Shown here one piece after another: positions 3,611 through 24,311 of a stretch of 64,000 nucleotides of DNA. The stretch covers positions 186,001-250,000 of IMG/VR virus record IMGVR_UViG_3300037502_003770, one strand, 5' to 3'. Under the pieces are notes generated by a model. The model was given only the letters and a program-made list of their open reading frames with translations, did no database searches and was not told the DNA's origin. How positions within the stretch are numbered: the stretch's first letter is position 1; every line of letters starts with the position of its first letter. A program made the position numbers and the translations under genes.

Positions 3611-6015
3611 TATGTTATTCTTTTATTTAAAGTTTCATTTATTTTAAGTTTATTTAATTCTCTGAAAAAGATTTCATTCAAATTTTGGTTTTTATCTTCA
3701 GGTTCATTTTCTTGATTAGGAAGATTGTTTTGGTCAGGACCACCTAAACCTAAATCACCACCTCCGCCAGCAGGATTATTTAAATCAGGTGTACCACCTA
3801 AACCTAAATCACCGCCTCCAGTATCACCAAAACCTCCTGCACCACCGAAATCACCTCCAAGAGAAGCGCCTCCACCGAAGCCACCACCTCCACCAAAATC
3901 ACCCATACCCATATCACCGCCTTGTGGTTGTTGACCTTGAGTTTGGGTACTTGGTTTAATATCAAAACCAGCATTTTGGTATTTAATATATTTATCCATT
4001 AATTTAGATGATTTAATTAACATTGGTGCAGACTTTACTTCTTCACCTATTTTAGATTCAATAAATTGGTCCAAAATATCATCTAAAATATCTTCTTCCG
4101 ACATACCAAGTATTTCTTTTTTAGCTTTTGTTGTTGACATTGGCGCTAAACCATTAGCCCCTTGTTGTGTTGCTGAATTATATGCTGTTAATTTTTCATT
4201 CATATTAGCAATTTTCAACATTTCAGCTTGAGATGATGGGTTTTGCATTGTAATTGTAAAATTATCAATATTTTCTAAGAAATCCCCTCCCTTCAAAAAA
4301 AGATGTATAATTGCAATTTTATTTAATTCTGAAATTAAAGATTGTTGTATTCTATTAATTTTTCTTGCAAACCTTATGTCTAATATAGAAAGGTTTGTTC
4401 CACCCTTTTCCATAGAACCATCCGATGAAAACGCAAGAAATATTTTAGGAATACCTAAACCTGTAAATAATAAATCCCTGAAGTAAGAAACATCCATGAT
4501 TGCATCAAGATTTGAGTTTTGTGTAAATATTCCACAAGATAGTAAAAAGTTATGATAATCATGTTCTTCTTCATTACCATCGATTGTAAGTGTACCAGTA
4601 TCAATTTTATAATCTAAATCCTCAACTGAAATAACAGAAATATTTATTTCTTTATTAAAACTCCATAATGATTCATTAACTTCTAAATCTTTAGCTTCTT
4701 TAATACCATTAAATTTAGTTGGGAATTTATGGTCAGGTGTAGTAATAATTGTTTCACTATTATCTAAAGTAATTTTTACTACATCAGTATTTTTTCTTGT
4801 TACAGCAGCATTAGTAATTTTACCTGGTACTATTTCACCAGTTTCAGGATTAATACTATAAGTCCATAATTGTTTAGTTTTATCAGAATTAAATTCATCT
4901 ATAATTTCAGATAACATTAAACTTCTACCATCTAATAAATCTATTTTAGTATCTAAAGCTAGACAAGCACCAGGAAGAGTTTCTATTGGAGATGAAGCGT
5001 TATCACTTCTTGTTGGAATAAAAATATCTTCATCATTTGTTGCAACGTGATACTTCCAGTTATAATCACCAGTTTTAGGGTCAATTAATGGTTTTTTCTT
5101 TACTTTATTTGCAACCATTTGAACATAAGAACCTATATCTTCTGTAGGAATATTTCCAACATTTACTTTATAAATCCTTCTTTCAGCGGCTCTAGTAATT
5201 CTATATACTAACATAGAATCTTCCATCATACTAAGTATTCTCCAAATTCTTCTTACTTTATCTAAAACAGACATACCATAAGGCATCCTTCTATCATCAC
5301 CAAGTAATCTAAAGTGTGCTATTTGCCAGTGAGTAAATTGACTACTATCAATACCACCTTCAGTCATTTTATTTCTAAAATAAATATTAATATCTTCATT
5401 ACCATTACTATCTCTTTTAGTTTCTTCAACTCTTTCAATATTAATATTTGGTAATTGTTTTGCACCTGTTACACCTTCTTTATCATTTAAATTTAAATAA
5501 ACAAAATTATCGCCATATTTACACATGTTTCTTGCCCAGAATTGCAATGTAGTATTAACATCCAATACTTTATAAAAAAGATATTCTAATTCTTGTTTAA
5601 CTCTTTTATTATCAGAATAAATATTAATTACTTTACCATTATCGCCAATAGTTGTAGCTTCTTCTGATAATAAATCTAATGCAGAACCAATTATAGGATA
5701 TGATTCCATTAATTCAAAATCATAATATTGCATAATTCTATTAGATTCATAAGCTAATGAATTATTTCTATCTACTTTAATTAAGCTTTTATATTGATTA
5801 TCAAAAAATACACTTTGTTGATATGTTTTAACTTTTAATTCTAATTCTTCTTTTGTTTTAGCAATTATTTTATCTTTATCAACATCTACTTCATTTTGGT
5901 TTATTTTATTACCATTAATATCTTCTATATTTTTATTAACATATGAGGTACTACTAATGTTAGTAGGAAAAAGTAAATCACCTAATCTGTTAAATATCGT
6001 CTTGTTATTAGCCAT
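3610..6015 (-). CDS. Portal protein (T4 gp20-like), intein-containing, Gly-rich C-terminal tail
   Basis: gp20-like motifs QIAHFRLLGD, PYGMSVL, EDSMLVYRITRAAERRIYKVNVGN, EDIFIP, IETLPGA, GIPKIFL, DIRFARKINRIQ. Confidence 0.93.
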   Translation of the reverse strand: MANNKTIFNRLGDLLFPTNISSTSYVNKNIEDINGNKINQNEVDVDKDKIIAKTKEELELKVKTYQQSVFFDNQYKSLIKVDRNNSLAYESNRIMQYYDFELMESYPIIGSALDLLSEEATTIGDNGKVINIYSDNKRVKQELEYLFYKVLDVNTTLQFWARNMCKYGDNFVYLNLNDKEGVTGAKQLPNINIERVEETKRDSNGNEDINIYFRNKMTEGGIDSSQFTHWQIAHFRLLGDDRRMPYGMSVLDKVRRIWRILSMMEDSMLVYRITRAAERRIYKVNVGNIPTEDIGSYVQMVANKVKKKPLIDPKTGDYNWKYHVATNDEDIFIPTRSDNASSPIETLPGACLALDTKIDLLDGRSLMLSEIIDEFNSDKTKQLWTYSINPETGEIVPGKITNAAVTRKNTDVVKITLDNSETIITTPDHKFPTKFNGIKEAKDLEVNESLWSFNKEINISVISVEDLDYKIDTGTLTIDGNEEEHDYHNFLLSCGIFTQNSNLDAIMDVSYFRDLLFTGLGIPKIFLAFSSDGSMEKGGTNLSILDIRFARKINRIQQSLISELNKIAIIHLFLKGGDFLENIDNFTITMQNPSSQAEMLKIANMNEKLTAYNSATQQGANGLAPMSTTKAKKEILGMSEEDILDDILDQFIESKIGEEVKSAPMLIKSSKLMDKYIKYQNAGFDIKPSTQTQGQQPQGGDMGMGDFGGGGGFGGGASLGGDFGGAGGFGDTGGGDLGLGGTPDLNNPAGGGGDLGLGGPDQNNLPNQENEPEDKNQNLNEIFFRELNKLKINETLNKRIT
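4516..4965 (-). mobile_element. Mini-intein (150 aa, no homing endonuclease) in portal
   Basis: Begins CLALDTKI (Cys1, aa 351), block B TTPDHKF, block F/G HNFLLSCGIFTQN followed by Ser+1; inserted at LPGA|SNL. Confidence 0.92.
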
Positions 6016-15759: not shown

Positions 15760-17208
15760 ATGAGCAAAAGTAAAATTATTAAAGATTCTATTATTGAAAT
15801 AGAAAATATTAAAGAAGAAGCTAAATTATTAGCTAAAGAAGAAATTTTAAACGAAGTTCAAGAATCAATAGAACAACGTACTAAACAATTATTTGAAGAA
15901 AAATTGAAAGCACTAGAAGAAAGTGAAGAACTTGATGAAGAATTTACTACTAGTGAAATAAATATAAATGAAGAAGATTGTGGTTGCGATGATAAAGATG
16001 AAAAACCACTTGAAGAAAAAATAAATAAAGAAAAAACAGATTTAAAAAATAAAATGAAAAAAAATAAACTAAATTTGAAAGAAGAAGAAATTTCTTTAGA
16101 TGAAATGTTTCATGATGATATGAATGAAGGTGAAAATGATGATATTGATATCGAAGCATTGCACCAAAGTGGTGAAATAAGTGATGAAGCTTATAATTTA
16201 TGGAAACAAACTTACGGTGATAAAAACAACAATAATAATATGCAAGAAATTGACGAAACTTGGGATGAAAATAGTCTAATGGAATTTTTAAACGAATTAG
16301 ATATGGAAGATGAAACCGAAGAAATGCCTTCTGATGAAGAAGATATGGAGGGTGATGTTGAAAATATTGAAGGAGAAGAATTACCATCAGAAGATGAATT
16401 AGATAATGAAGAAATACCTTCTGATGAAGAAGATATGGAAATGGATGATGAAGAATTTGATTTTGATGATATTGAATTTGATATTGAAGACGATATGGAA
16501 GGTGAAGATTTCTCTGATGAAGATATGGAAATGGGTGATGAAGAATTTGATTTTGATGAAGAAGAAGATGAACTTGAAGATATGGATTCAGAAGATATGA
16601 ATTTTGATTCAGAAGAAGAAGATTTAGAAGATATGGATAATATCGAAGGTGAAGATGAATTTGAAGAAATAGATGATTTGGAAGAAGCTTTAGCTTATCC
16701 TCATCAATTACATAAAAATGTGGGTGGTAAGAGCTTTCCACAAAGAGACGGTGCACCAGAAAGACGTTCTAATATGAACGAAGATATTAAGAGACTTAAA
16801 AAGTTAGTGGAATCTGTTGTAAATGAAAATAAGACCTTGAAATCTAAGGTACAAAAAACTGAGGCTCTTGAAGCTTTATTACAAGAAACAAAAAATAAAT
16901 TGTATGATACAATGGTATTAGCACAAAAAACTGTTTATGCGAATAAAGTTTTATTTGAAAATACTCTTACTAATGATGAAAAAGCTGAAGTAATGAAAGC
17001 TTTTAGTAAGGCTGGCTCTAAAGATGAAATTGTTTCATTAAATGAAAGTTTTAATTCTAAATTTAATGGTACTAAAAGAACACTTAATACTAGCATAAGT
17101 AAAGTAATTTCTACAAGTAAAGGTGTTTTAAAAGAACATACTATTAGTGATGAAGATTCAAATACTAGTCGTATGAAAAACCTAATAAATTACAAACCAA
17201 AAAAATAA
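15760..17208 (+). CDS. Prohead scaffolding/core protein
   Basis: Between protease and capsid genes; coiled-coil ends, long D/E-rich centre with repeats PSDEEDME and DEEFDFD; CTATTTA at 15739-15745. Confidence 0.8.
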   Translation: MSKSKIIKDSIIEIENIKEEAKLLAKEEILNEVQESIEQRTKQLFEEKLKALEESEELDEEFTTSEININEEDCGCDDKDEKPLEEKINKEKTDLKNKMKKNKLNLKEEEISLDEMFHDDMNEGENDDIDIEALHQSGEISDEAYNLWKQTYGDKNNNNNMQEIDETWDENSLMEFLNELDMEDETEEMPSDEEDMEGDVENIEGEELPSEDELDNEEIPSDEEDMEMDDEEFDFDDIEFDIEDDMEGEDFSDEDMEMGDEEFDFDEEEDELEDMDSEDMNFDSEEEDLEDMDNIEGEDEFEEIDDLEEALAYPHQLHKNVGGKSFPQRDGAPERRSNMNEDIKRLKKLVESVVNENKTLKSKVQKTEALEALLQETKNKLYDTMVLAQKTVYANKVLFENTLTNDEKAEVMKAFSKAGSKDEIVSLNESFNSKFNGTKRTLNTSISKVISTSKGVLKEHTISDEDSNTSRMKNLINYKPKK

Positions 17209-17283: not shown

Positions 17284-19053
17284 ATGGAAACATTATTAAA
17301 TTCAGGTCTGGTTGGTAACATTGGACTTAAAAATTTACAAGAAAACCGCAAACTAATCGTTGAGCGTTGGGAACAAACTGAAATGCTTGATGGTCTTTCA
17401 GGTTCAGCAAAAGAAAATATTGCACAGTTATTTGAAAACCAAGCAAGTTATATGTTGAACGAATCAACTGTATCTGATAGTTCTGGTTCTTTTGAGACAG
17501 TTGCTTTCCCTATTGTTCGTAGGGTATTCCAAAAATTACTTGCAAATGAAATTGTATCAATTCAAGCTATGTCAGCCCCAATTGGTAGATTGTATTTCTT
17601 TAATCCAAAAGTTTCTGTTAGAAATGTTAATGGTAATATTCAAAGTCATACTTCTATGGATGGTGGTTATTCAAATGCTGCTACTAATTATATTGTTGAT
17701 GCTGCTACTGGTAGAAAAACGCTTGTTGCTGGTACTGATAACTTTAACAAAACTGGTGGTACTCAATATAGTTCAACTTCACTTTACGATTCATTCTATT
17801 CTACTGAATATAACGATGAAGGTACTGCTTTATTTGATTTAACAAGAGGTAAAATTTTTGTTCAAAACATTGTAGCCGTTCCAAGAAATAGTGTATTTAC
17901 TAATGGTGTAACAGAAAAATATCAAGTTAAATTAACTGGTTTTAGTTCAACTAGAGATGGTAGATTAGTAGGTCCTGTTGGTACTGTTGCTGATACAGAA
18001 GAATTCTTATCAAGCTTAAAAGTTACTTGTAATCAAAACTTATTTAATGGTCCAAGTTCAATTGCTTTCGCAAGTGGTACTACTTTGGATTTTAGAACTT
18101 TGGCTCAAGCTTACGGTAAGCCACTTGTTAAAAATGGTACTATTGAATTAGAAATTGATGTAACTGGTCCGTCTTTGACTTCAGGTTTATTTATTCCTTT
18201 GACCGCAGCTACAGGTACAACCGCAGCTTCAGGTGGTGGTACTCCAGTATTTAGTGCTTCATATTCAGTTTATTCTGATTTAGAAGAAGATAGCGAAATG
18301 GCAGAAGTAACTTTTGATTTAGATTTCGTAACTGTTGATGTAACTTCTCGTAAATTGAGAACTTCATTTACTCCTGAAATTCAGCAAGATGCAGCTGCTT
18401 TCCACAACATTGATGTTGAAGCTGAATTGACTGCAATGCTTTCTGAAACTATTTCAGCTGAAATTGATAGGGAAATTTTACGTGATTTGCGTAAAGGTGC
18501 AGCTTGGTCTACTTCATGGGATTATGCAGGTTATAGAAAATTAGTTGCAGCTGGTAGTGCAGTTGGTATTACTCAAAAAGATTATAATCAAGAATTAATT
18601 ACTAAAGTAAATGAACTTTCTTCTTTGATTATGAAAACAACTCTTAGAGGTGGTGCTAATTTCGTAGTAGTTTCTCCTGAAATCGCTGCTGTATTAAATA
18701 ACTTAGAATATTTCCACGTAACTGATGCTTCTCCAGAAGAAACTAAGTTCTCTATGGGTATCGAGAAAATTGGTTCAATTCAAGGTCGTTATACTGTTTA
18801 TGTAGATATGTATGCTCCAGCAGGTAAAATGTTGGTGGGACATAAGGGTGAAGGCATCTTCCACGCCGGGTTCGTATATGCGCCGTTTGTGCCATTATTA
18901 CTTTTCCCTGGTGTTACTAACCCTAACAACTTCTCAAAAGTATTAGGAATTATGACTAGATACGCTAAGAAAATGGTAAATAACCGTTTCTACGGTGTAG
19001 TAAACGTAAAAGGTTTAAATTATACACCAGTTTCAGAATTCTTAGGTGCTTAA
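17284..19053 (+). CDS. Major capsid protein (T4 gp23-like) with large insertion domain
   Basis: AFPIVRRVF, IVSIQAMSAPIG, RKLRTSFTPEIQQD, EIDREILRDL, GANFVVVSPE, GFVYAP.VP, GIMTRYA; probable maturation site MLNE|S. Confidence 0.96.
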   Translation: METLLNSGLVGNIGLKNLQENRKLIVERWEQTEMLDGLSGSAKENIAQLFENQASYMLNESTVSDSSGSFETVAFPIVRRVFQKLLANEIVSIQAMSAPIGRLYFFNPKVSVRNVNGNIQSHTSMDGGYSNAATNYIVDAATGRKTLVAGTDNFNKTGGTQYSSTSLYDSFYSTEYNDEGTALFDLTRGKIFVQNIVAVPRNSVFTNGVTEKYQVKLTGFSSTRDGRLVGPVGTVADTEEFLSSLKVTCNQNLFNGPSSIAFASGTTLDFRTLAQAYGKPLVKNGTIELEIDVTGPSLTSGLFIPLTAATGTTAASGGGTPVFSASYSVYSDLEEDSEMAEVTFDLDFVTVDVTSRKLRTSFTPEIQQDAAAFHNIDVEAELTAMLSETISAEIDREILRDLRKGAAWSTSWDYAGYRKLVAAGSAVGITQKDYNQELITKVNELSSLIMKTTLRGGANFVVVSPEIAAVLNNLEYFHVTDASPEETKFSMGIEKIGSIQGRYTVYVDMYAPAGKMLVGHKGEGIFHAGFVYAPFVPLLLFPGVTNPNNFSKVLGIMTRYAKKMVNNRFYGVVNVKGLNYTPVSEFLGA

Positions 19054-19078
19054 TCTATTAAAATAGGTTATTAAAACA

Positions 19079-19104
19079 AAAGGGTACTTTTTTAAGTACC
19101 CTTT
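19079..19104. terminator. Bidirectional terminator between convergent capsid and nuclease genes
   Basis: AAAGGGTACTT-TTTT-AAGTACCCTTT stem-loop. Confidence 0.75.
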
Positions 19105-20615
19105 GTTCTTTTATAGATAAGTGTTTCAAATTTTTCTTTATTTTTTTCAAAATCGTTTTTAAAAGTAAAAATTTGTTTACTATAAGTTTTATTTAAAAAT
19201 TTACATTGATTATTTACTTTACTATATGTAAATTTTGTTAATTTAGAAGCTTCAGTCATAGACCTATATTCTGCAATAATTTCTTTTGTCTCTAAATCAT
19301 ATAAATAAACAGGCATACTTTCACCGCTTAATAATTTACTTTCTTTTATTTTATTAATAGTTTCTTCATCTCTTTTTTTACCTTCCCAAAATTTAGGTGA
19401 ATTTTCTGATAACCATTTCTTTTGTTCTTCTGTTTTTGGTCTACCTAAAACTTTAGCTGCTTCACCACGTTTTACTCTTTTATCAACATGTTCTTTAGTT
19501 TGTTTTCTACCTAAACCAGCTTTAGACATCTTTTGTCTTGTTTCTTCTGAAATAATTTTATTTCTACCACCTAAATCAATATTATAACCTATGTTTCTAT
19601 CAGTAGAATTATATTCTTTTATATAAAAGATTTCTTTTTCATTTAGTTCATTAATATCATGAGTTTCGTAAATAACGTCAAATTTAAAGTTATCAAATCC
19701 ATATTTAATAATTGCATTTTTTAAATGCTCATTACATTTTAATCTTTTATAACATGTTATTCTATGTCTTAATAAACGATAAGTTTGTCCAATATAAATT
19801 TTACCATTAATTAAATTTGTTATTTTATAAATAAGACCAGGATTTCTTAAATTAAACCTTTCTATAATATCTTCTTTTTTAGGATAAGGTTTAATCATAT
19901 GTTTAATTTTCTCATAAAAATTTTTATTTTCATATTTATTACCTATAAAATAAAAATATCTACTTTTACGAAGTTGTGTATTAAATTTAGCGTTAGGGTA
20001 AACTTTCAATACATTTTCAACTGAACTAGAACCAATCTTTTTTCTTATAGTTTTTTCTGAATAAGCTTTCCCATCTATTATAATTTTCATTCTTTTTTTC
20101 TCATTACCATACTTGTCATAATTCCCTTCCATAAGACCTACATAATACCAATTGCATGATTGATAGATTATACCTATTTCACCAGCAAGAGCGTCTGTTG
20201 TGGCTGTAATGACCTTATAATCGGTGTTTTTCTTTAACAATTTACAAACTTTTGAAATAAAGAAAGATGCTGTATTAATAGGTGTCCAATGAAGACAAAC
20301 TCCTCTTGAAAGGAGGATTATTTTTTCAAAGAAATCATATTTTTTCCAATGGTCTTTATTTGCGGAATACTCATGAGAAAAAACAAGCACACCTCCAAGG
20401 TATTCAATATTATCAATATTAAAAAATATACCAAAATAGTATATATTATAAGGTGCTAAAGCTTTAAGGTATTCATATTCTTTAACAATATTTTCAGCTT
20501 CTAAACGAGTTATTTCTTTAATAACCGTATTTTTCAAAGAAGCTTTATTTTTATCAAAAGGAAGTATTTCTTCTAATTCTTTTTCTTTTCTAATTAGATA
20601 CTGATGGCAATCCAT
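19092..20615 (-). CDS. Fusion: Mom-like (GNAT-fold) DNA modification domain + GIY-YIG endonuclease with NUMOD3/IENR1-like DNA-binding tail
   Basis: aa 1-245: LSRGVCLHWTPINTASFFIS, TDALAGEIGIIYQSCNWYYVG, KSRYFYFIG...KPYPK (Mom-like); from aa 260: LIYKITNLINGKIYIGQT, LNEKEIFYI, GYN; ISEETRQKMSKA; PVYLYDL...YRSMTEAS. Confidence 0.85.
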   Translation of the reverse strand: MDCHQYLIRKEKELEEILPFDKNKASLKNTVIKEITRLEAENIVKEYEYLKALAPYNIYYFGIFFNIDNIEYLGGVLVFSHEYSANKDHWKKYDFFEKIILLSRGVCLHWTPINTASFFISKVCKLLKKNTDYKVITATTDALAGEIGIIYQSCNWYYVGLMEGNYDKYGNEKKRMKIIIDGKAYSEKTIRKKIGSSSVENVLKVYPNAKFNTQLRKSRYFYFIGNKYENKNFYEKIKHMIKPYPKKEDIIERFNLRNPGLIYKITNLINGKIYIGQTYRLLRHRITCYKRLKCNEHLKNAIIKYGFDNFKFDVIYETHDINELNEKEIFYIKEYNSTDRNIGYNIDLGGRNKIISEETRQKMSKAGLGRKQTKEHVDKRVKRGEAAKVLGRPKTEEQKKWLSENSPKFWEGKKRDEETINKIKESKLLSGESMPVYLYDLETKEIIAEYRSMTEASKLTKFTYSKVNNQCKFLNKTYSKQIFTFKNDFEKNKEKFETLIYKRTKGT

Positions 20616-20679
20616 ATATTTTTATTACAATTTATTTTATATTTAAACGGATTTATACTATTAAAACTGTCTTTTTTTG

Positions 20680-21414
20680 TTAAATTTTATTTGTATATTT
20701 AAGAATTTTTTCTATTAGGTCTTTTCTATATTGTATAGGATATACTTTTACATTACCATCATTTAATAAATGAAAAATACTTAATTTATCAATAGATACT
20801 TTTTCATTAAGTTCGGTCATATAAGCATAGATACTTAATTGCAGGGTATAAATACTTATTTCACAAGAAGGAAGTATTTCTAAGGGAGAAAGCATTGTTT
20901 GATTATAGTTATTATCTATTCTTAATTGTTTATTAGTTTTCCAATCTAGGATAGATACTTTATTATTCTTTTTATATACTTTAATATCGGCAGTACCAGC
21001 TAAACCAATATCTTTATTATGAATTTTTGATTCAGCTAGTACAAGTTCGCATCTTTCTTTAAGTTTTAAATTTTCTAAAAAATCAATATACTTTTGCATA
21101 ATATCTTTTTCAATAAAAGGATTTTCTTCAAAGGAATAAGAATCTTTTATAAGATATTCTTCTAATGTATTATGAATTAAAGTACCTTTATCTGTTGATT
21201 TTTTATTTTCTATTTTCCATTGATTTAATATTTCTTCTTTAGAAAGGTTAGTATATTTAGGGTTAGTTTTAGAATAAGCACATTTAGTTGACCAATAATC
21301 TTCATCAAAAGGTGTTTCAAATTGGTGAATAAAATTAGTTACTCTTTCATAGAGATTTCCTTCTTTATCTTGATACTTATTTAGTGTTTCATTTAAGAAT
21401 AGTTCGTTATTCAT
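20680..21414 (-). CDS. PD-(D/E)XK family exonuclease
   Basis: KGTLIH, AES, LAGTADI, ILDWKT, LQLSIY motifs in canonical order. Confidence 0.88.
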   Translation of the reverse strand: MNNELFLNETLNKYQDKEGNLYERVTNFIHQFETPFDEDYWSTKCAYSKTNPKYTNLSKEEILNQWKIENKKSTDKGTLIHNTLEEYLIKDSYSFEENPFIEKDIMQKYIDFLENLKLKERCELVLAESKIHNKDIGLAGTADIKVYKKNNKVSILDWKTNKQLRIDNNYNQTMLSPLEILPSCEISIYTLQLSIYAYMTELNEKVSIDKLSIFHLLNDGNVKVYPIQYRKDLIEKILKYTNKI

Positions 21415-21489: not shown

Positions 21490-22038
21490 TTAAAGTTTAA
21501 CATAAGTTGTACCAGAGATAAATTCTCTTTTATTTCTTTTTTCATTTAATTGAGATACTGTATGACCAAATGTTTTTTCAAAGTGTGGCGCATCTTTAAA
21601 TGATTTCCAATCTCCGCCCCATATCCAGTTATATTTTTTAAATACTTCAACAACTTCCATCCAATCAGGTTTTTTATCATTATCAAAATCTTTTCTCATA
21701 TCCCAAGATACTTCTTTATTATCAATTAATAAACAGAAATCTAAAGCAAGACCAAAGTTATGAATTGATTGCCATTCTCTAGCTCTTGTAACAACTTTAT
21801 TTTGAGCTGCGGTAATTGGTCCCATATTAGCAGCTTTTCTTAAAGAATTAACAGTTGTTAAATTTTGTCTTCCTTGAGCAAATAAGGCTCTTTGCTCAGC
21901 TTCGGTTCTTAGAGTATAAGTAAATCTTACTTCAGCTCTACCTGTTAATTTAGTACATATTTCTTTATATATTGTTTCAACTTCTTGTCTAACAGAAGGG
22001 TGAAGGGTTTGTATTCTTTGTAGAGTTATACTGTCCAT
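21490..22038 (-). CDS. Endolysin, M15 family L-Ala-D-Glu peptidase
   Basis: RTEAEQRALFAQGR, SIHNFGLALDF, WGGDW, DAPHFE; CTATTTA at 22057-22063 (minus). Confidence 0.92.
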   Translation of the reverse strand: MDSITLQRIQTLHPSVRQEVETIYKEICTKLTGRAEVRFTYTLRTEAEQRALFAQGRQNLTTVNSLRKAANMGPITAAQNKVVTRAREWQSIHNFGLALDFCLLIDNKEVSWDMRKDFDNDKKPDWMEVVEVFKKYNWIWGGDWKSFKDAPHFEKTFGHTVSQLNEKRNKREFISGTTYVKL

Positions 22039-22343
22039 AATAAAAATCTTTTATTATAAATAGTATTTATTACTAATTCAATTAATAATCTTATTTTAAA
22101 TTTAGATGTTTTTGGTATATCTCTGTAAGATACAGGTATTTTCTTATTTTTTATGATATAAAGTGTTAAATAATAATAAAACTTATAATTATAATATTTT
22201 TTATTTTGTATAAAGAAATAATATTCTGATGGTAGTAGACATTTTTTATTAGTATAAATATCTTTTAATTTTATATTAAAATATAAATAACATCTTTTAT
22301 TCTCAAGATAAATAAAGTTATCATTAAATAGAATTATATACAT
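22026..22343 (-). CDS. Small paralog-array protein
   Basis: N-terminus MYIILFNDNFIYLE shared with four neighbours. Confidence 0.65.
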   Translation of the reverse strand: MYIILFNDNFIYLENKRCYLYFNIKLKDIYTNKKCLLPSEYYFFIQNKKYYNYKFYYYLTLYIIKNKKIPVSYRDIPKTSKFKIRLLIELVINTIYNKRFLLWTV

Positions 22344-22364
22344 AAGTTTAATTAATATATTAAA

Positions 22365-22781
22365 TTACCAACGCTTACATAATTTATATTCTTCTATAAT
22401 TCTTTGTTTTAAATCAGAAGGTACAAAATTAATAAGGTCCTCATGAAATGGATAGTTGTCAAAATTAATTTTACAAATTTCATAATCTATGAAAGAATCG
22501 GGAACAAAATCAATACAAAAAATAGAATTTTTTACTAGTGTTTTATAAAAAATACGATTAATTTTAGTAGTATTAAATTGTAACATTGAAAAACTTATTG
22601 CTGAAATAATATAGTTATCTGATTTTGATAATGTTGTAAGCGTATTAAAATACATTGAAATAAAGTTTTTACAAACATTTATATTATCTATAATTTTTGT
22701 TCCGACTGGAAGGTTGAGTCTATCAAAATCAAAATATGTTTCCACATAAAAGAAATTATCATTAAATATATTTATTCTCAT
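22365..22781 (-). CDS. Small paralog-array protein
   Basis: MRINIFNDNFFYVE; C-terminal FVPDSFIDYEICK resembles a DUF4116-like repeat. Confidence 0.65.
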   Translation of the reverse strand: MRINIFNDNFFYVETYFDFDRLNLPVGTKIIDNINVCKNFISMYFNTLTTLSKSDNYIISAISFSMLQFNTTKINRIFYKTLVKNSIFCIDFVPDSFIDYEICKINFDNYPFHEDLINFVPSDLKQRIIEEYKLCKRW

Positions 22782-22993
22782 AAAATTAGATTTTGGTTAA
22801 AATAATATTGATATTTAATACGTGAAAGTTCTTTAAAACTATAAATACTAACAAGTCTTAATTTACTTTTTAAATCAAAGTTACAATAAAAACAAAAATC
22901 ATTAATTTTTAATTCTGTTGATAATGTAGCACCATATGAAGTTAACCATTCATTATAATAACGATTATTTTTAATTTGTATTGTTATTTTCAT
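22778..22993 (-). CDS. Hypothetical small protein
   Basis: Tightly packed in same-strand array; MKITI start. Confidence 0.5.
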   Translation of the reverse strand: MKITIQIKNNRYYNEWLTSYGATLSTELKINDFCFYCNFDLKSKLRLVSIYSFKELSRIKYQYYFNQNLIL

Positions 22994-22999
22994 TATTTG

Positions 23000-23206
23000 T
23001 TAAATAGGTTTATAATATTCATTAACAATAAAAATTTTATTAAAATAAGAATAAATATGTTCACAAATACCTGATTTATCATTAAAACTGGATAATGTAA
23101 TTGCAACAATATTCATTAAAAGTAAATTTGAAACCATACTTTTAGATGTTATATAATAATTCTCTCTATAACGAGAATTTACGTATAATTTAATATATAT
23201 TTCCAT
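23000..23206 (-). CDS. Hypothetical small protein
   Basis: MEIYI start shared with 23219-23410. Confidence 0.5.
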   Translation of the reverse strand: MEIYIKLYVNSRYRENYYITSKSMVSNLLLMNIVAITLSSFNDKSGICEHIYSYFNKIFIVNEYYKPI

Positions 23207-23218
23207 AATAAAAAGTCA

Positions 23219-23410
23219 TTAAATATAAAAATTATAAAAAGTAATTATAAACCTTTCATACGTATAATTTGTAAAAGTATTATTTATTCTTATAAATTGT
23301 TCTCCAATTAATTTTTTGTTAGATGAATATAATAAGTAACTAAAATTATTATTTCTTTTATCATATATTTCATTATAAGTTGTTATATTATTATTAATGT
23401 ATATTTCCAT
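23219..23410 (-). CDS. Hypothetical small protein
   Basis: MEIYI start; overlaps upstream stop. Confidence 0.5.
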   Translation of the reverse strand: MEIYINNNITTYNEIYDKRNNNFSYLLYSSNKKLIGEQFIRINNTFTNYTYERFIITFYNFYI

Positions 23411-23804
23411 AATTTGTTAATTTATTAAATAAATCTTCAGTATATAGATAATCTATATCATATTCTTTTTTTAATCTACGTCTAAGTCCCTTTGATAATT
23501 TTCTTAAATCAAAACCAAATCTTATCATATTATTATCATGTCTAACTTTTTCTTTAAAAAGTTCATATTTAAATTTAGATATTCTAGGTATATATTGAAG
23601 CATAATAAAATAACTATTTTTTATAATAAATGAAACAGCATAAAAGTAAATATTTTTATTACAATAATCTTTATTTGGTATAAAGTTTGCAACAAAATTA
23701 CCATTATAATTTTTATTATAAAATATATATCTATTAAAGTAATAATAGTTATTTAAGTTACTTTCAATATAAATATAGTTATCATCAAAAAGTATTATTT
23801 TCAT
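23394..23804 (-). CDS. Small paralog-array protein
   Basis: MKIILFDDNYIYIE; YIPRISKFKYEL. Confidence 0.65.
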   Translation of the reverse strand: MKIILFDDNYIYIESNLNNYYYFNRYIFYNKNYNGNFVANFIPNKDYCNKNIYFYAVSFIIKNSYFIMLQYIPRISKFKYELFKEKVRHDNNMIRFGFDLRKLSKGLRRRLKKEYDIDYLYTEDLFNKLTNYGNIH

Positions 23805-24311
23805 TTATATATGAATTTTATTTTCTAAATAATATGTATTGTCGTATGTACGATGTGTGAATATGTGAGTGTCTTTATGATTTTTTTCTATTTCATCTTT
23901 TACTAAGTAAAGTAGTTTTCTATTAATATATCTTACTTTTGTTCTAGTAGAATGATTAAAAACATCTTTATTTAAAAGACAAGCTATTACAGATAGTTCT
24001 AATTTATATATAGAATTATTAGGTATATGATTTACATAAAAACAATAATATCTTTTACTTTCAAAAACACTTATAGCTATTTTTTTATATAATTTATGGT
24101 TACATAAATCTTTATTTTCTAAAAAAACATAATCATAAAAACAATCTTTATTATTTCTTAATTTATCATCGTCATAATGAAAAAAACTATAATAATATTG
24201 AAGTGAATTTATATTACAAAATATATAACTTGTTCGTTTATTATCTTCAGTTATATGAAAATATTTATTTTCAATATAAATAATATTTTCGTTAAAAATG
24301 ATTATTCCCAT
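23805..24311 (-). CDS. Small paralog-array protein
   Basis: MGIIIFNENIIYIE; HIPNNSIYKLEL. Confidence 0.65.
   Translation of the reverse strand: MGIIIFNENIIYIENKYFHITEDNKRTSYIFCNINSLQYYYSFFHYDDDKLRNNKDCFYDYVFLENKDLCNHKLYKKIAISVFESKRYYCFYVNHIPNNSIYKLELSVIACLLNKDVFNHSTRTKVRYINRKLLYLVKDEIEKNHKDTHIFTHRTYDNTYYLENKIHI

What the first reader, a model, noticed from the sequence alone, without database searches (positions are those of the whole stretch)
18853..18891. Short recoded patch in the capsid gene next to a free-standing endonuclease
Seen: codons GGC ATC TTC CAC GCC GGG TTC GTA TAT GCG CCG TTT GTG; 21 of 33 bases at 18861-18893 are G/C, while the rest of this gene uses GCT/GCA, GGT, CCA/CCT and GTT/GTA almost throughout. 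The peptide AGFVYAPFVPLLLFP also departs from the usual gp23-type GY.YAPYVP. It lies ~200 nt from the convergent GIY-YIG gene. Known: T4 free-standing seg/mob endonucleases cut the neighbouring conserved gene of relatives while the resident allele is protected by sequence changes. Inference: this is the immunised target site of the adjacent nuclease.
Basis: partly seen in the sequence, partly recalled or inferred. Interest (0 to 1): 0.66.

Follow-up and report, generated by a model that had tools for sequence, protein, structure and literature searches.

The report
Recoded capsid patch beside homing nuclease
A 60-base stretch of a jumbo phage's capsid gene is rewritten in rare G/C-ending codons, and comparison with relatives ties it to the neighbouring selfish nuclease gene, most likely as that enzyme's protected target site, though no cleavage has been tested.

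Summary
The patch (core 18853-18894, full extent about 18832-18905) is the most extreme cluster of G/C-ending codons in the 312-kb, 22% GC phage genome. Given the gene's own codon use, P is about 4e-8.

The neighbouring convergent gene is the genome's only complete GIY-YIG nuclease. It is a 507-aa fusion of a Mom-like domain, GIY-YIG and NUMOD1.

All five distinct close relatives carry the nuclease and keep a G/C-rich patch. The patch differs by 17-25% between genomes whose capsid genes otherwise differ by 1-2%. Most changes are synonymous, with an excess of G/C swaps.

Two same-subfamily relatives with the same peptide and the same codon bias, but no adjacent nuclease, use ordinary A/T-ending codons. 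Replacements at ultraconserved residues of the motif occur in 9 of 13 nuclease-linked capsid genes and 0 of 103 without one, with at least two independent origins.

RNA structure, a second genomic copy and a family-wide codon habit were tested and rejected.

So a link to the nuclease is well supported. "Immunised target site" is the best reading (about 0.5) but is unproven. No nuclease-free close relative exists in the databases, four carrier lineages keep the unrecoded motif, and cleavage is untested. The closest known case is T4 segD.

The parts
17284..19053 (+). Major capsid protein gene (gp23 type, 589 aa)
   Evidence: Pfam PF07068 Gp23, E = 1.5e-67. ORF listed.
18832..18905 (+). Recoded, hypervariable G/C-rich patch encoding LVGHKGEGIFHAGFVYAPFVPLLLF. 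The core is 18853-18894, and the most variable part is 18860-18899.
   Evidence: composition; P = 4e-8; genome-wide maximum. (five alleles; 17-25% divergence against 1-2% in the flanks; excess of G/C swaps).
18937..18990 (+). Second conserved capsid motif (GIMTRYAKKMVNNRFYG). It is not recoded in this window but is G/C-enriched family-wide whether or not a nuclease is present. It is the exchange boundary in the L165/L167 pair.
19079..19104 (.). Bidirectional intrinsic-terminator-like hairpin between the convergent capsid and nuclease genes. It overlaps the last codons of the nuclease ORF and is conserved in relatives.
   Evidence: 11-pair stem with T runs on both strands. Conservation.
19092..20615 (-). 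507-aa Mom-like + GIY-YIG + NUMOD1 fusion nuclease gene. It is the only complete GIY-YIG gene in the genome.
   Evidence: PHROG homing-endonuclease families, E = 1.4e-39. Intact in all five relatives.
19878..20525 (-). Mom-like (DNA-modification family) domain, aa 31-246
   Evidence: PF25680, 82-84 bits. phrog_1384. Many invariant residues across 54 homologues.
19602..19838 (-). GIY-YIG catalytic domain, aa 260-338
   Evidence: PF01541 above the curated cut-off. Y263, Y274, R285, E328 and N345 are invariant in 54 homologues.
19141..19500 (-). Fast-diverging, mosaic C-terminal DNA-binding region of the nuclease (NUMOD3-like GRPKT segment, linker, NUMOD1/HTH at 19212-19316)
   Evidence: 9-17% divergence between genomes that are 1-2.5% apart elsewhere. 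Mosaic protein variants. NUMOD1.

Best explanation
The patch is the footprint, inside an essential capsid motif, of the adjacent free-standing GIY-YIG homing nuclease. Most likely it is the resident, cleavage-resistant version of that enzyme's recognition site.

Proposed mechanism (inferred, not shown):
- The nuclease recognises a roughly 40-bp site in the conserved GHKG...G-Y-I-Y-A-P-Y-V-P segment of gp23 genes that lack it, and cuts there.
- The break is repaired from the nuclease-bearing genome, which drags the nuclease gene about 200 bp away along with it.
- A carrier genome survives only if its own copy is a poor substrate.
- GIY-YIG enzymes of the I-TevI type read long sites tolerantly through the minor groove (PMC2988022). 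A-T and T-A pairs look alike in the minor groove, so resistance needs many changes, and especially A/T-to-G/C changes. That would explain a cluster of G/C-ending codons plus a few conservative residue changes (Y>F, A>S, V>I).

Shown here: the compositional anomaly; its restriction to carriers; its DNA-level hypervariability; its place at the edge of exchange tracts that run into the nuclease's DNA-binding end; and convergent changes in other carrier lineages.

Inferred only: cleavage at this site, resistance of the resident allele, and the minor-groove rationale.
For: 1. Strength and uniqueness. P = 4e-8 within the gene, and the top window of the whole genome. The genome has one complete GIY-YIG gene, and it lies 201 nt away.

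2. Specificity.
- Across 144 distinct relatives, four-fold sites in the patch are not G/C-enriched.
- The seven strongest P1 scores among about 150 capsid genes are all GIY-YIG carriers.
- Carriers outside the clade also exceed 78 non-carriers (Mann-Whitney one-sided P = 0.006). Carriers of a different, Zn-finger type of nuclease do not.

3. Controls. L175 and L176 have the same peptide subfamily, the same four-fold GC3 (0.05-0.06) and no adjacent nuclease. They use GCT GGT TAT ATC TAC GCT CCT TAC GTT CCT, with no significant enrichment (P = 0.73 and 0.075).

4. DNA-level pressure.
- Five alleles differ mostly synonymously.
- G/C swaps make up 5 of 21 polymorphic sites in the patch against 43 of 613 elsewhere (P = 0.016).
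- L164 and L082 differ at 16 of 40 bases here but by 1.1% in the capsid body.

5. Exchange boundary. In the trio win/L164/L082, divergence rises at the patch and stays raised through the capsid 3' end into the nuclease C-terminal region.

6. Convergence. Residue variants at the ultraconserved motif occur in 9 of 13 carrier genes, 0 of 103 non-carriers and 1 of 41 undecidable genes. They arose in at least 2-3 separate branches.

7. Family habit. Mom-GIY-YIG homologues at about 50% identity sit within 2 kb downstream of gp23 in 3 of 3 blind look-ups, and also in L085 and L087.

8. The enzyme looks active. The catalytic residues are invariant and the ORF is intact in every relative.
Against: - No cleavage data exist.
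- No nuclease-free close relative exists in the collections searched, so the key with/without comparison rests on relatives at about 57% identity.
- Four carrier lineages (L169, L173/L174, L087, L086) keep the consensus motif with only weak enrichment (P = 0.02-0.15).
- The suspected covariation between patch alleles and nuclease DNA-binding variants failed once more sequences were added.
- The carrier statistics are not phylogenetically corrected, and some carriers were found through the nuclease itself.
- From memory, not read here (Sokolov et al. 2018, Virology 515:215): T4 SegD, the closest analogue, has an identical site in segD+ and segD- phages and does not home.
- The minor-groove reason for G/C is my inference.
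Confidence: 0.5

Rival explanations
1. The patch is the nuclease's actual cut site in its own genome, not an immune allele. Occasional self-cleavage and repair from co-infecting relatives, or error-prone repair, makes it a local hot spot for mutation and conversion. The G/C richness would be what the enzyme prefers, or a by-product of repair.
For: The same hot-spot and exchange-boundary data fit this reading. L082's allele looks like a short (about 40 nt) replacement tract in an otherwise near-identical gene. From memory, T4 SegD's site is the same in carriers and non-carriers.
Against: A site cut in every infection of an essential late gene should be costly. G/C is retained through G/C swaps, which suggests selection on composition rather than random repair scars. 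The same-peptide controls L175 and L176, which have no nuclease next to the capsid gene, use the A/T-coded form.
Confidence: 0.17
2. The patch is a short gene-conversion import, or a relic, from a G/C-richer relative with the same peptide (such as L169 or L170, 38-48% GC). It is kept by chance or hitch-hiking and has no role in nuclease immunity.
For: G/C-richer relatives encode the same GIFHAG.IYAPYVPLMLFP peptide with similar codons. The region is demonstrably mosaic.
Against: - The clade-specific residues (E rather than D, F rather than Y) are not those of L169 or L170.
- The nuclease gene and the rest of the capsid 3' end are as A/T-rich as the genome (GC 24.5%, GC3 0.12).
- Five diverged genomes all keep G/C at four-fold sites despite a background of 6%, with G/C swaps.
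- Independent carrier lineages changed the same motif.
Confidence: 0.12
3. The patch is a selected rare-codon cluster or an RNA element. It would be a translational pause that aids folding of the chaperonin-dependent capsid protein, or an mRNA structure.
For: G/C-ending codons are the rare ones in this genome. Any rare codon would serve, which fits the G/C swaps. Family-wide, the extreme GC3 windows of capsid genes cluster at two conserved C-terminal motifs.
Against: - The fold is no better than shuffles (z = 0.06) and the predicted structures differ between alleles.
- Four-fold sites of this motif are not enriched family-wide.
- Same-peptide controls without the nuclease lack the cluster.
- The family-wide signal is mainly at the other motif (18937-18990) and consists of C-ending two-fold codons.
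Confidence: 0.07

Closest known systems
Phage T4 segD (free-standing GIY-YIG gene between genes 23 and 24)
   Same: A GIY-YIG seg-type gene lies immediately downstream of the major capsid gene and in the opposite orientation to it (PMC2988022). It is present in some close relatives and absent in others (PMC8778798).
   Different: T4 Seg proteins are much shorter than this 507-aa fusion and have no reported Mom-like domain (from my own knowledge, not checked here). Its target was listed as unknown in 2010. From memory (Sokolov et al. 2018, not held in the library), its site is identical in segD+ and segD- phages and it does not home. Here the capsid gene carries a strongly recoded, hypervariable patch.
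T4 SegE, SegF, SegG and MobE (intronless homing by free-standing nucleases)
   Same: The nuclease gene sits between conserved genes. The listed target lies in the neighbouring conserved gene (uvsW, 56, 32, nrdB; table in PMC2988022). Flanking markers are co-converted.
   Different: For those enzymes cleavage and homing were demonstrated. Here they are inferred. No comparably dense G/C recoding of the resident allele has been described for them, as far as I know.
I-TevI / I-TevII (GIY-YIG intron endonucleases)
   Same: An N-terminal-type GIY-YIG catalytic domain is followed by a linker and NUMOD/HTH DNA-binding modules. These enzymes bind long, tolerant sites through the minor groove. The best cultured-phage hits of the C-terminal half are annotated as I-TevI-like.
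   Different: This gene is not intron-encoded, carries an extra 250-aa Mom-like domain in front, and is only 30-37% identical.
Nuclease-bounded exchange modules ('HEG islands') in ICP1 and other phages (PMC10448857)
   Same: Nuclease genes lie next to essential genes, capsid genes included, at the borders of recombinant tracts.
   Different: Those are T5orf172 and HNH families. That work does not describe recoded immunity patches (no occurrence of 'recoded' or 'synonymous').
Phage Mu Mom and Mom-like DNA-modification proteins
   Same: The N-terminal 250 aa match PF25680 and phrog_1384. The cultured-phage homologues are 25-34% identical over up to about 220 aa and are annotated Mom-like.
   Different: Here the domain is fused to a homing-type nuclease. 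Its activity and role are unknown.

Membership tests
Free-standing GIY-YIG (Seg-like) homing endonuclease | GIY-YIG catalytic domain with the conserved Tyr, Tyr, Arg, Glu and Asn | tested here: met
   PF01541 at 27-32 bits, above the 22.6 cut-off. Y263, Y274, R285, E328 and N345 are invariant in 54 homologues.
Free-standing GIY-YIG (Seg-like) homing endonuclease | C-terminal NUMOD/HTH DNA-binding modules | tested here: met
   NUMOD1 at 26.7-29.5 bits, above the cut-off. NUMOD3 is annotated in many homologues.
Free-standing GIY-YIG (Seg-like) homing endonuclease | Own ORF between conserved genes, not inside an intron or intein | tested here: met
   The ORF 19092-20615 lies between the capsid gene and a PD-(D/E)XK gene. 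The capsid ORF is uninterrupted.
Free-standing GIY-YIG (Seg-like) homing endonuclease | Patchy presence or absence among related genomes | tested here: inconclusive
   It is patchy across the wider capsid family: 13 carriers against 103 non-carriers. All five close relatives carry it. One weak contig joint that skips 19163-20682 was seen.
Free-standing GIY-YIG (Seg-like) homing endonuclease | Cleaves the nuclease-free allele of a neighbouring gene and is inherited preferentially | not testable with these tools
   This needs enzyme assays or co-infection. The only indirect support is that exchange tracts begin at the patch.
Immunised (cleavage-resistant) resident target site | Sequence changes confined to carriers, within a conserved segment near the nuclease gene | tested here: met
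   Caveats: the controls are only about 57% identical, and four carrier lineages are unrecoded.
Immunised (cleavage-resistant) resident target site | Resident allele resists cleavage while the consensus allele is cut | not testable with these tools
Mom family (PF25680) | Profile match above the curated cut-off over the whole domain | tested here: met
   82-84 bits against a 27.1 cut-off, covering profile positions 3-202 of 202.
Mom family (PF25680) | Adenine-modifying activity | not testable with these tools
   The only PDB match by sequence is very weak (8bv8, E = 0.49). Many invariant residues suggest the domain is functional.

The most novel reading that the evidence does not exclude
Mom-like + GIY-YIG fusion proteins are an undescribed class of composite homing enzymes dedicated to the 3' end of gp23 capsid genes. 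They are locked in an arms race with a hypervariable immunity patch. The pressure is strong enough to recode an ultraconserved capsid motif into G/C-ending codons, which block minor-groove reading or remove the adenines a Mom-type domain could act on. It has repeatedly forced residue replacements (Y>F, A>S, Q>A) in independent phage lineages.
Probability: 0.25. Interest if true: 0.75.

Novelty: new variant of a known kind. Interest (0 to 1): 0.55.

Why it matters
If the reading is right, a purely compositional signal would locate the target of an uncharacterised homing nuclease in an uncultured phage. That signal is a dense island of rare G/C-ending codons in an A/T-rich essential gene. It could be scanned for in metagenomes to pair nucleases with their sites.

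It would also show selfish nucleases shaping the protein sequence of one of the most conserved viral proteins.

It draws attention to a widespread but undescribed architecture: a Mom-like DNA-modification domain fused to a GIY-YIG nuclease. More than 100 sequence clusters have it, and it sits beside gp23 in every case looked up.

If the reading is wrong, the patch is still the strongest local codon anomaly in this genome and still needs an explanation.

Tried and rejected
- RNA structure. The 101-nt fold has z = 0.06 against shuffles, and the alleles fold differently.
- Ectopic donor. There is no second copy of the patch or of the capsid 3' end in the 312-kb genome.
- Family-wide codon habit. 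Relatives show only a mild excess here (+0.12, rank 70 of 579), carried by C-ending two-fold codons. Four-fold sites are not enriched.
- The stronger family-wide signal lies at 18937-18990 and is independent of nuclease presence.
- Covariation of patch allele with nuclease DNA-binding variant. Three sequences suggested it. Five sequences refuted it: L164 has L082's C-terminal variant but the G/C-type patch.
- Foreign G/C-rich cassette. The nuclease gene is 24.5% GC.
- Closer or nuclease-free relatives:
  - Phage GenBank records: best capsid match 41% identity.
  - IMG/VR and JGI metagenome scans: at most 52%.
  - A degenerate DNA pattern for the subfamily peptide in IMG/VR: 0 hits.
  - The 15-billion-protein collection holds only the two clusters already fetched.
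- Sequencing runs were available only as contigs, so they gave no allele frequencies.
- PDB sequence search of the nuclease half found nothing.
- The other G/C-rich spot in the window (3813-3873) is a Gly-rich coding stretch on the minus strand. It reflects amino-acid composition, not codon choice.
- The Sokolov et al. 2018 SegD paper is not held. What I say of it is from memory.

Full report
**Setting.** The window is bases 186001-250000 of a 312,694-bp IMG/VR virus record, estimated 96% complete and 22% GC. It is a T4-like jumbo phage from a subsurface metagenome. Gene 17284-19053 (+) is a gp23-type major capsid protein (PF07068, E = 1.5e-67). It follows a prohead protease and an acidic scaffold-like gene.

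The convergent gene 19092-20615 (-) encodes 507 aa. It has a Mom-like domain (aa 31-246, PF25680), a GIY-YIG domain (aa 260-338) and NUMOD1 (aa 434-467). PHROG homing-endonuclease families match at E = 1.4e-39. It is the only complete GIY-YIG, Mom or NUMOD1 gene in the genome. A conserved bidirectional terminator-like hairpin (19079-19104) separates the two genes.

- The quoted codons are there.
- Outside the patch the gene uses GGT/GGA for all 46 Gly codons, GTT/GTA for all 48 Val, GCT/GCA for 43 of 45 Ala, and CCA/CCT for 17 of 18 Pro.
- GGC, GGG, GCG and both GTG codons occur only in the patch.
- Ten of 13 codons end in G/C where 2.7 are expected (P = 4e-8).
- It is the most extreme 11-codon window of the whole genome.
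- The anomaly starts at about 18832 and reaches about 18905 in relatives.

**Relatives.** Cultured phages and IMG/VR hold nothing closer than 41-52% capsid identity. The large protein collection gave two close clusters (96% and 88%). Look-ups through both the capsid and the nuclease gave five distinct close genomes: L082, L164, L083=L165 and L167=L168. All carry the same fusion gene, convergent and intact.

All keep a G/C-rich patch, but no two alleles are the same:
- Variants include GCG/GCC, GGG/GGC, CCG/CCC/CCA and CTG/CTC/CTT/TTA.
- L082 has a largely A/T-type 3' half with A>S and V>I.
- The window has its own Y>F and M>L.
- Most differing codons are synonymous.
- Sites that show both G and C are 5 of 21 polymorphic sites in the patch against 43 of 613 elsewhere (P = 0.016).

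**Hot spot and exchange boundary.** Divergence within the trio window/L164/L082, by segment:

| Segment | Divergence |
|---|---|
| Capsid body, 17850-18840 | 1.1-2.2% |
| Patch, 18841-18905 | 17-25% |
| Capsid 3' end and terminator, 18906-19140 | 3-7% |
| Nuclease C-terminal DNA-binding region, 19141-19500 | 9-17% |
| Beyond 19500 | 2-5% |

- For L164 against L082, the most divergent segment of the whole 2.7 kb is 18860-18899, with 16 of 40 bases different.
- In the other pair (L165/L167), divergence begins at about 18980, at the second conserved motif, and runs through the nuclease gene.
- So the capsid 3' end is the border of exchanged nuclease-containing modules.
- This pattern has been described for other phage nucleases (PMC10448857).
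- I first thought the patch alleles covaried with the nuclease's C-terminal variants. With five sequences this failed.

**Is it specific to nuclease carriers?**
- Across 144 distinct relatives the patch shows only a mild GC3 excess (+0.12, rank 70 of 579). It comes from C-ending Tyr, Ile, His and Phe codons. Gly, Ala, Pro and Val sites are not enriched.
- When about 150 capsid genes are scored for G/C-ending enrichment at 18832-18905, the top seven are all GIY-YIG carriers: the clade plus L085. The best non-carrier reaches only P = 5.5e-3.
- The six carriers outside the clade still exceed 78 non-carriers (Mann-Whitney P = 0.006). Carriers of a different Zn-finger nuclease do not.
- The best controls are L175 and L176. 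They share the GIFHAGYIYAPYVPLMLFP peptide and the same four-fold GC3 (0.05-0.06), and have no nuclease next to the capsid gene. Their motif is written with ordinary A/T-ending codons (P = 0.73 and 0.075).
- This also shows that most of the peptide 'departure' is a subfamily trait, present in dozens of clusters.

**Residue changes in the motif.** Residue variants at the ultraconserved positions G[Y>F].Y[A>S]P[Y>F] and [Q/M>A/L] are found in:
- 9 of 13 carrier genes;
- 0 of 103 non-carriers;
- 1 of 41 genes whose flank is too short to judge.

On a capsid tree these variants fall on at least two, probably three, separate branches: the window clade, L172+L178, and L085.

**The nuclease family.**
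- More than 100 clusters share the Mom + GIY-YIG architecture.
- In three blind look-ups of homologues at about 50% identity (L172, L173, L178), and in L085 and L087, the gene lies within 2 kb downstream of gp23. In those cases it is co-directional.
- L169, a 59% capsid relative, has a shorter GIY-YIG/NUMOD3 gene in the same convergent position as the window.
- The catalytic residues, and many residues of the Mom-like part, are invariant in 54 homologues.

**Interpretation.** The data tie the patch to the nuclease at the DNA level.

I add one possible reason for the G/C bias. GIY-YIG enzymes of this type bind long sites tolerantly through the minor groove. A/T swaps are nearly invisible there, while G/C pairs are not. 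This is inference.

The main rival is that the patch is itself the cut site and a repair hot spot. A neutral import from a G/C-richer relative and a rare-codon or RNA function fit less well.

**Weaknesses.**
- There is no nuclease-free close relative.
- Four carrier lineages are unrecoded.
- The statistics are not corrected for shared ancestry.
- There is some ascertainment through the nuclease.
- There is no biochemistry.

**Comparison with known systems.** T4 segD is a GIY-YIG gene between genes 23 and 24, antisense to them, with its target unknown in 2010. It is found in the same place in other T4-like phages. So the arrangement is known. New here are the Mom-like fusion, the dense hypervariable recoding, and the convergent residue changes in the capsid motif. 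I rate it a new variant of a known kind.

Noticed in passing
window 19092-20615 (-); homologues P0121-P0213: The 'GIY-YIG gene' is a fusion with a Mom-like DNA-modification domain. More than 100 sequence clusters share this architecture, and both halves have many invariant residues. In cultured phages the N-terminal half matches genes annotated as Mom-like DNA-modification proteins over up to about 220 aa. No description of the fusion was found in the papers searched.
   Followed up: partly
L172 3297-6485; L173 5001-6458; L178 4001-5497; L087 7382-8842; L085 7505-9055: Mom/GNAT-like + GIY-YIG genes sit just downstream of gp23 in distantly related jumbo phages (3 of 3 blind look-ups). L172 has two in tandem. 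The capsid 3' flank is a nuclease landing pad.
   Followed up: partly
window 18937-18990: The motif GIMTRYAKKMVNNRFYG is where the extreme G/C-ending windows of about 50 of 170 relatives' capsid genes fall (for example ACG AGA TAC GCG AAG AAG ATG GTG), whether or not a nuclease is present. Contigs of many unrelated phages pile up at 18945-18995 at 80% likeness or more. This nucleotide-level conservation is unexplained.
   Followed up: partly
L071 5960-7684; L085 5715-7427; L087 5722-7407; L178 2362-4020: A second nuclease-like gene of about 560-575 aa lies downstream of gp23 in many relatives (ROS/MucR zinc finger plus a restriction-endonuclease-like domain; PHROG 'homing endonuclease'). Its C-terminal 200 aa resemble the N-terminal domain of the L085 GIY-YIG fusion.
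   Followed up: partly
window 17600-17800: A second divergent block lies in the capsid gene between otherwise near-identical genomes (20-27 differences and a 9-nt indel at 17635). It is probably a surface insertion loop.
   Followed up: no
window 19162-20683 (run X4): One low-depth contig joins 19162 to 20683 and so skips 1520 nt, almost exactly the nuclease ORF. Its short side is only 27 nt, at 80% likeness. It could be a nuclease-free form or an artefact of A/T-rich sequence.
   Followed up: no
L167 1242-2480; L168 534-1772: Two close relatives carry an IS605 OrfB/TnpB (Cas12f-like) gene a few genes beyond the nuclease. No ORF that long appears in the corresponding part of the window.
   Followed up: no
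L169 1-97 (gene runs off the locus): The portal gene of a 59% capsid relative carries intein-splicing domains (Portal_T4 interrupted twice by PF14890).
   Followed up: no
window 22026-24311 (-): A tandem array of small paralogous ORFs share N-termini of the type M.IILFNDNFIYxE. This is an uncharacterised multigene family.
   Followed up: no
window 3700-3940 (-): The only other equally G/C-rich spot in the window is a Gly-rich, low-complexity coding stretch (GG.GG repeats) on the minus strand. It is explained by amino-acid composition.
   Followed up: yes
window 15760-17208 (+): A 482-aa protein between the protease-region genes and the capsid gene is extremely acidic, with Asp/Glu/Met repeats. 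It is probably a scaffold or core protein. Its repeat region differs in length between relatives.
   Followed up: no
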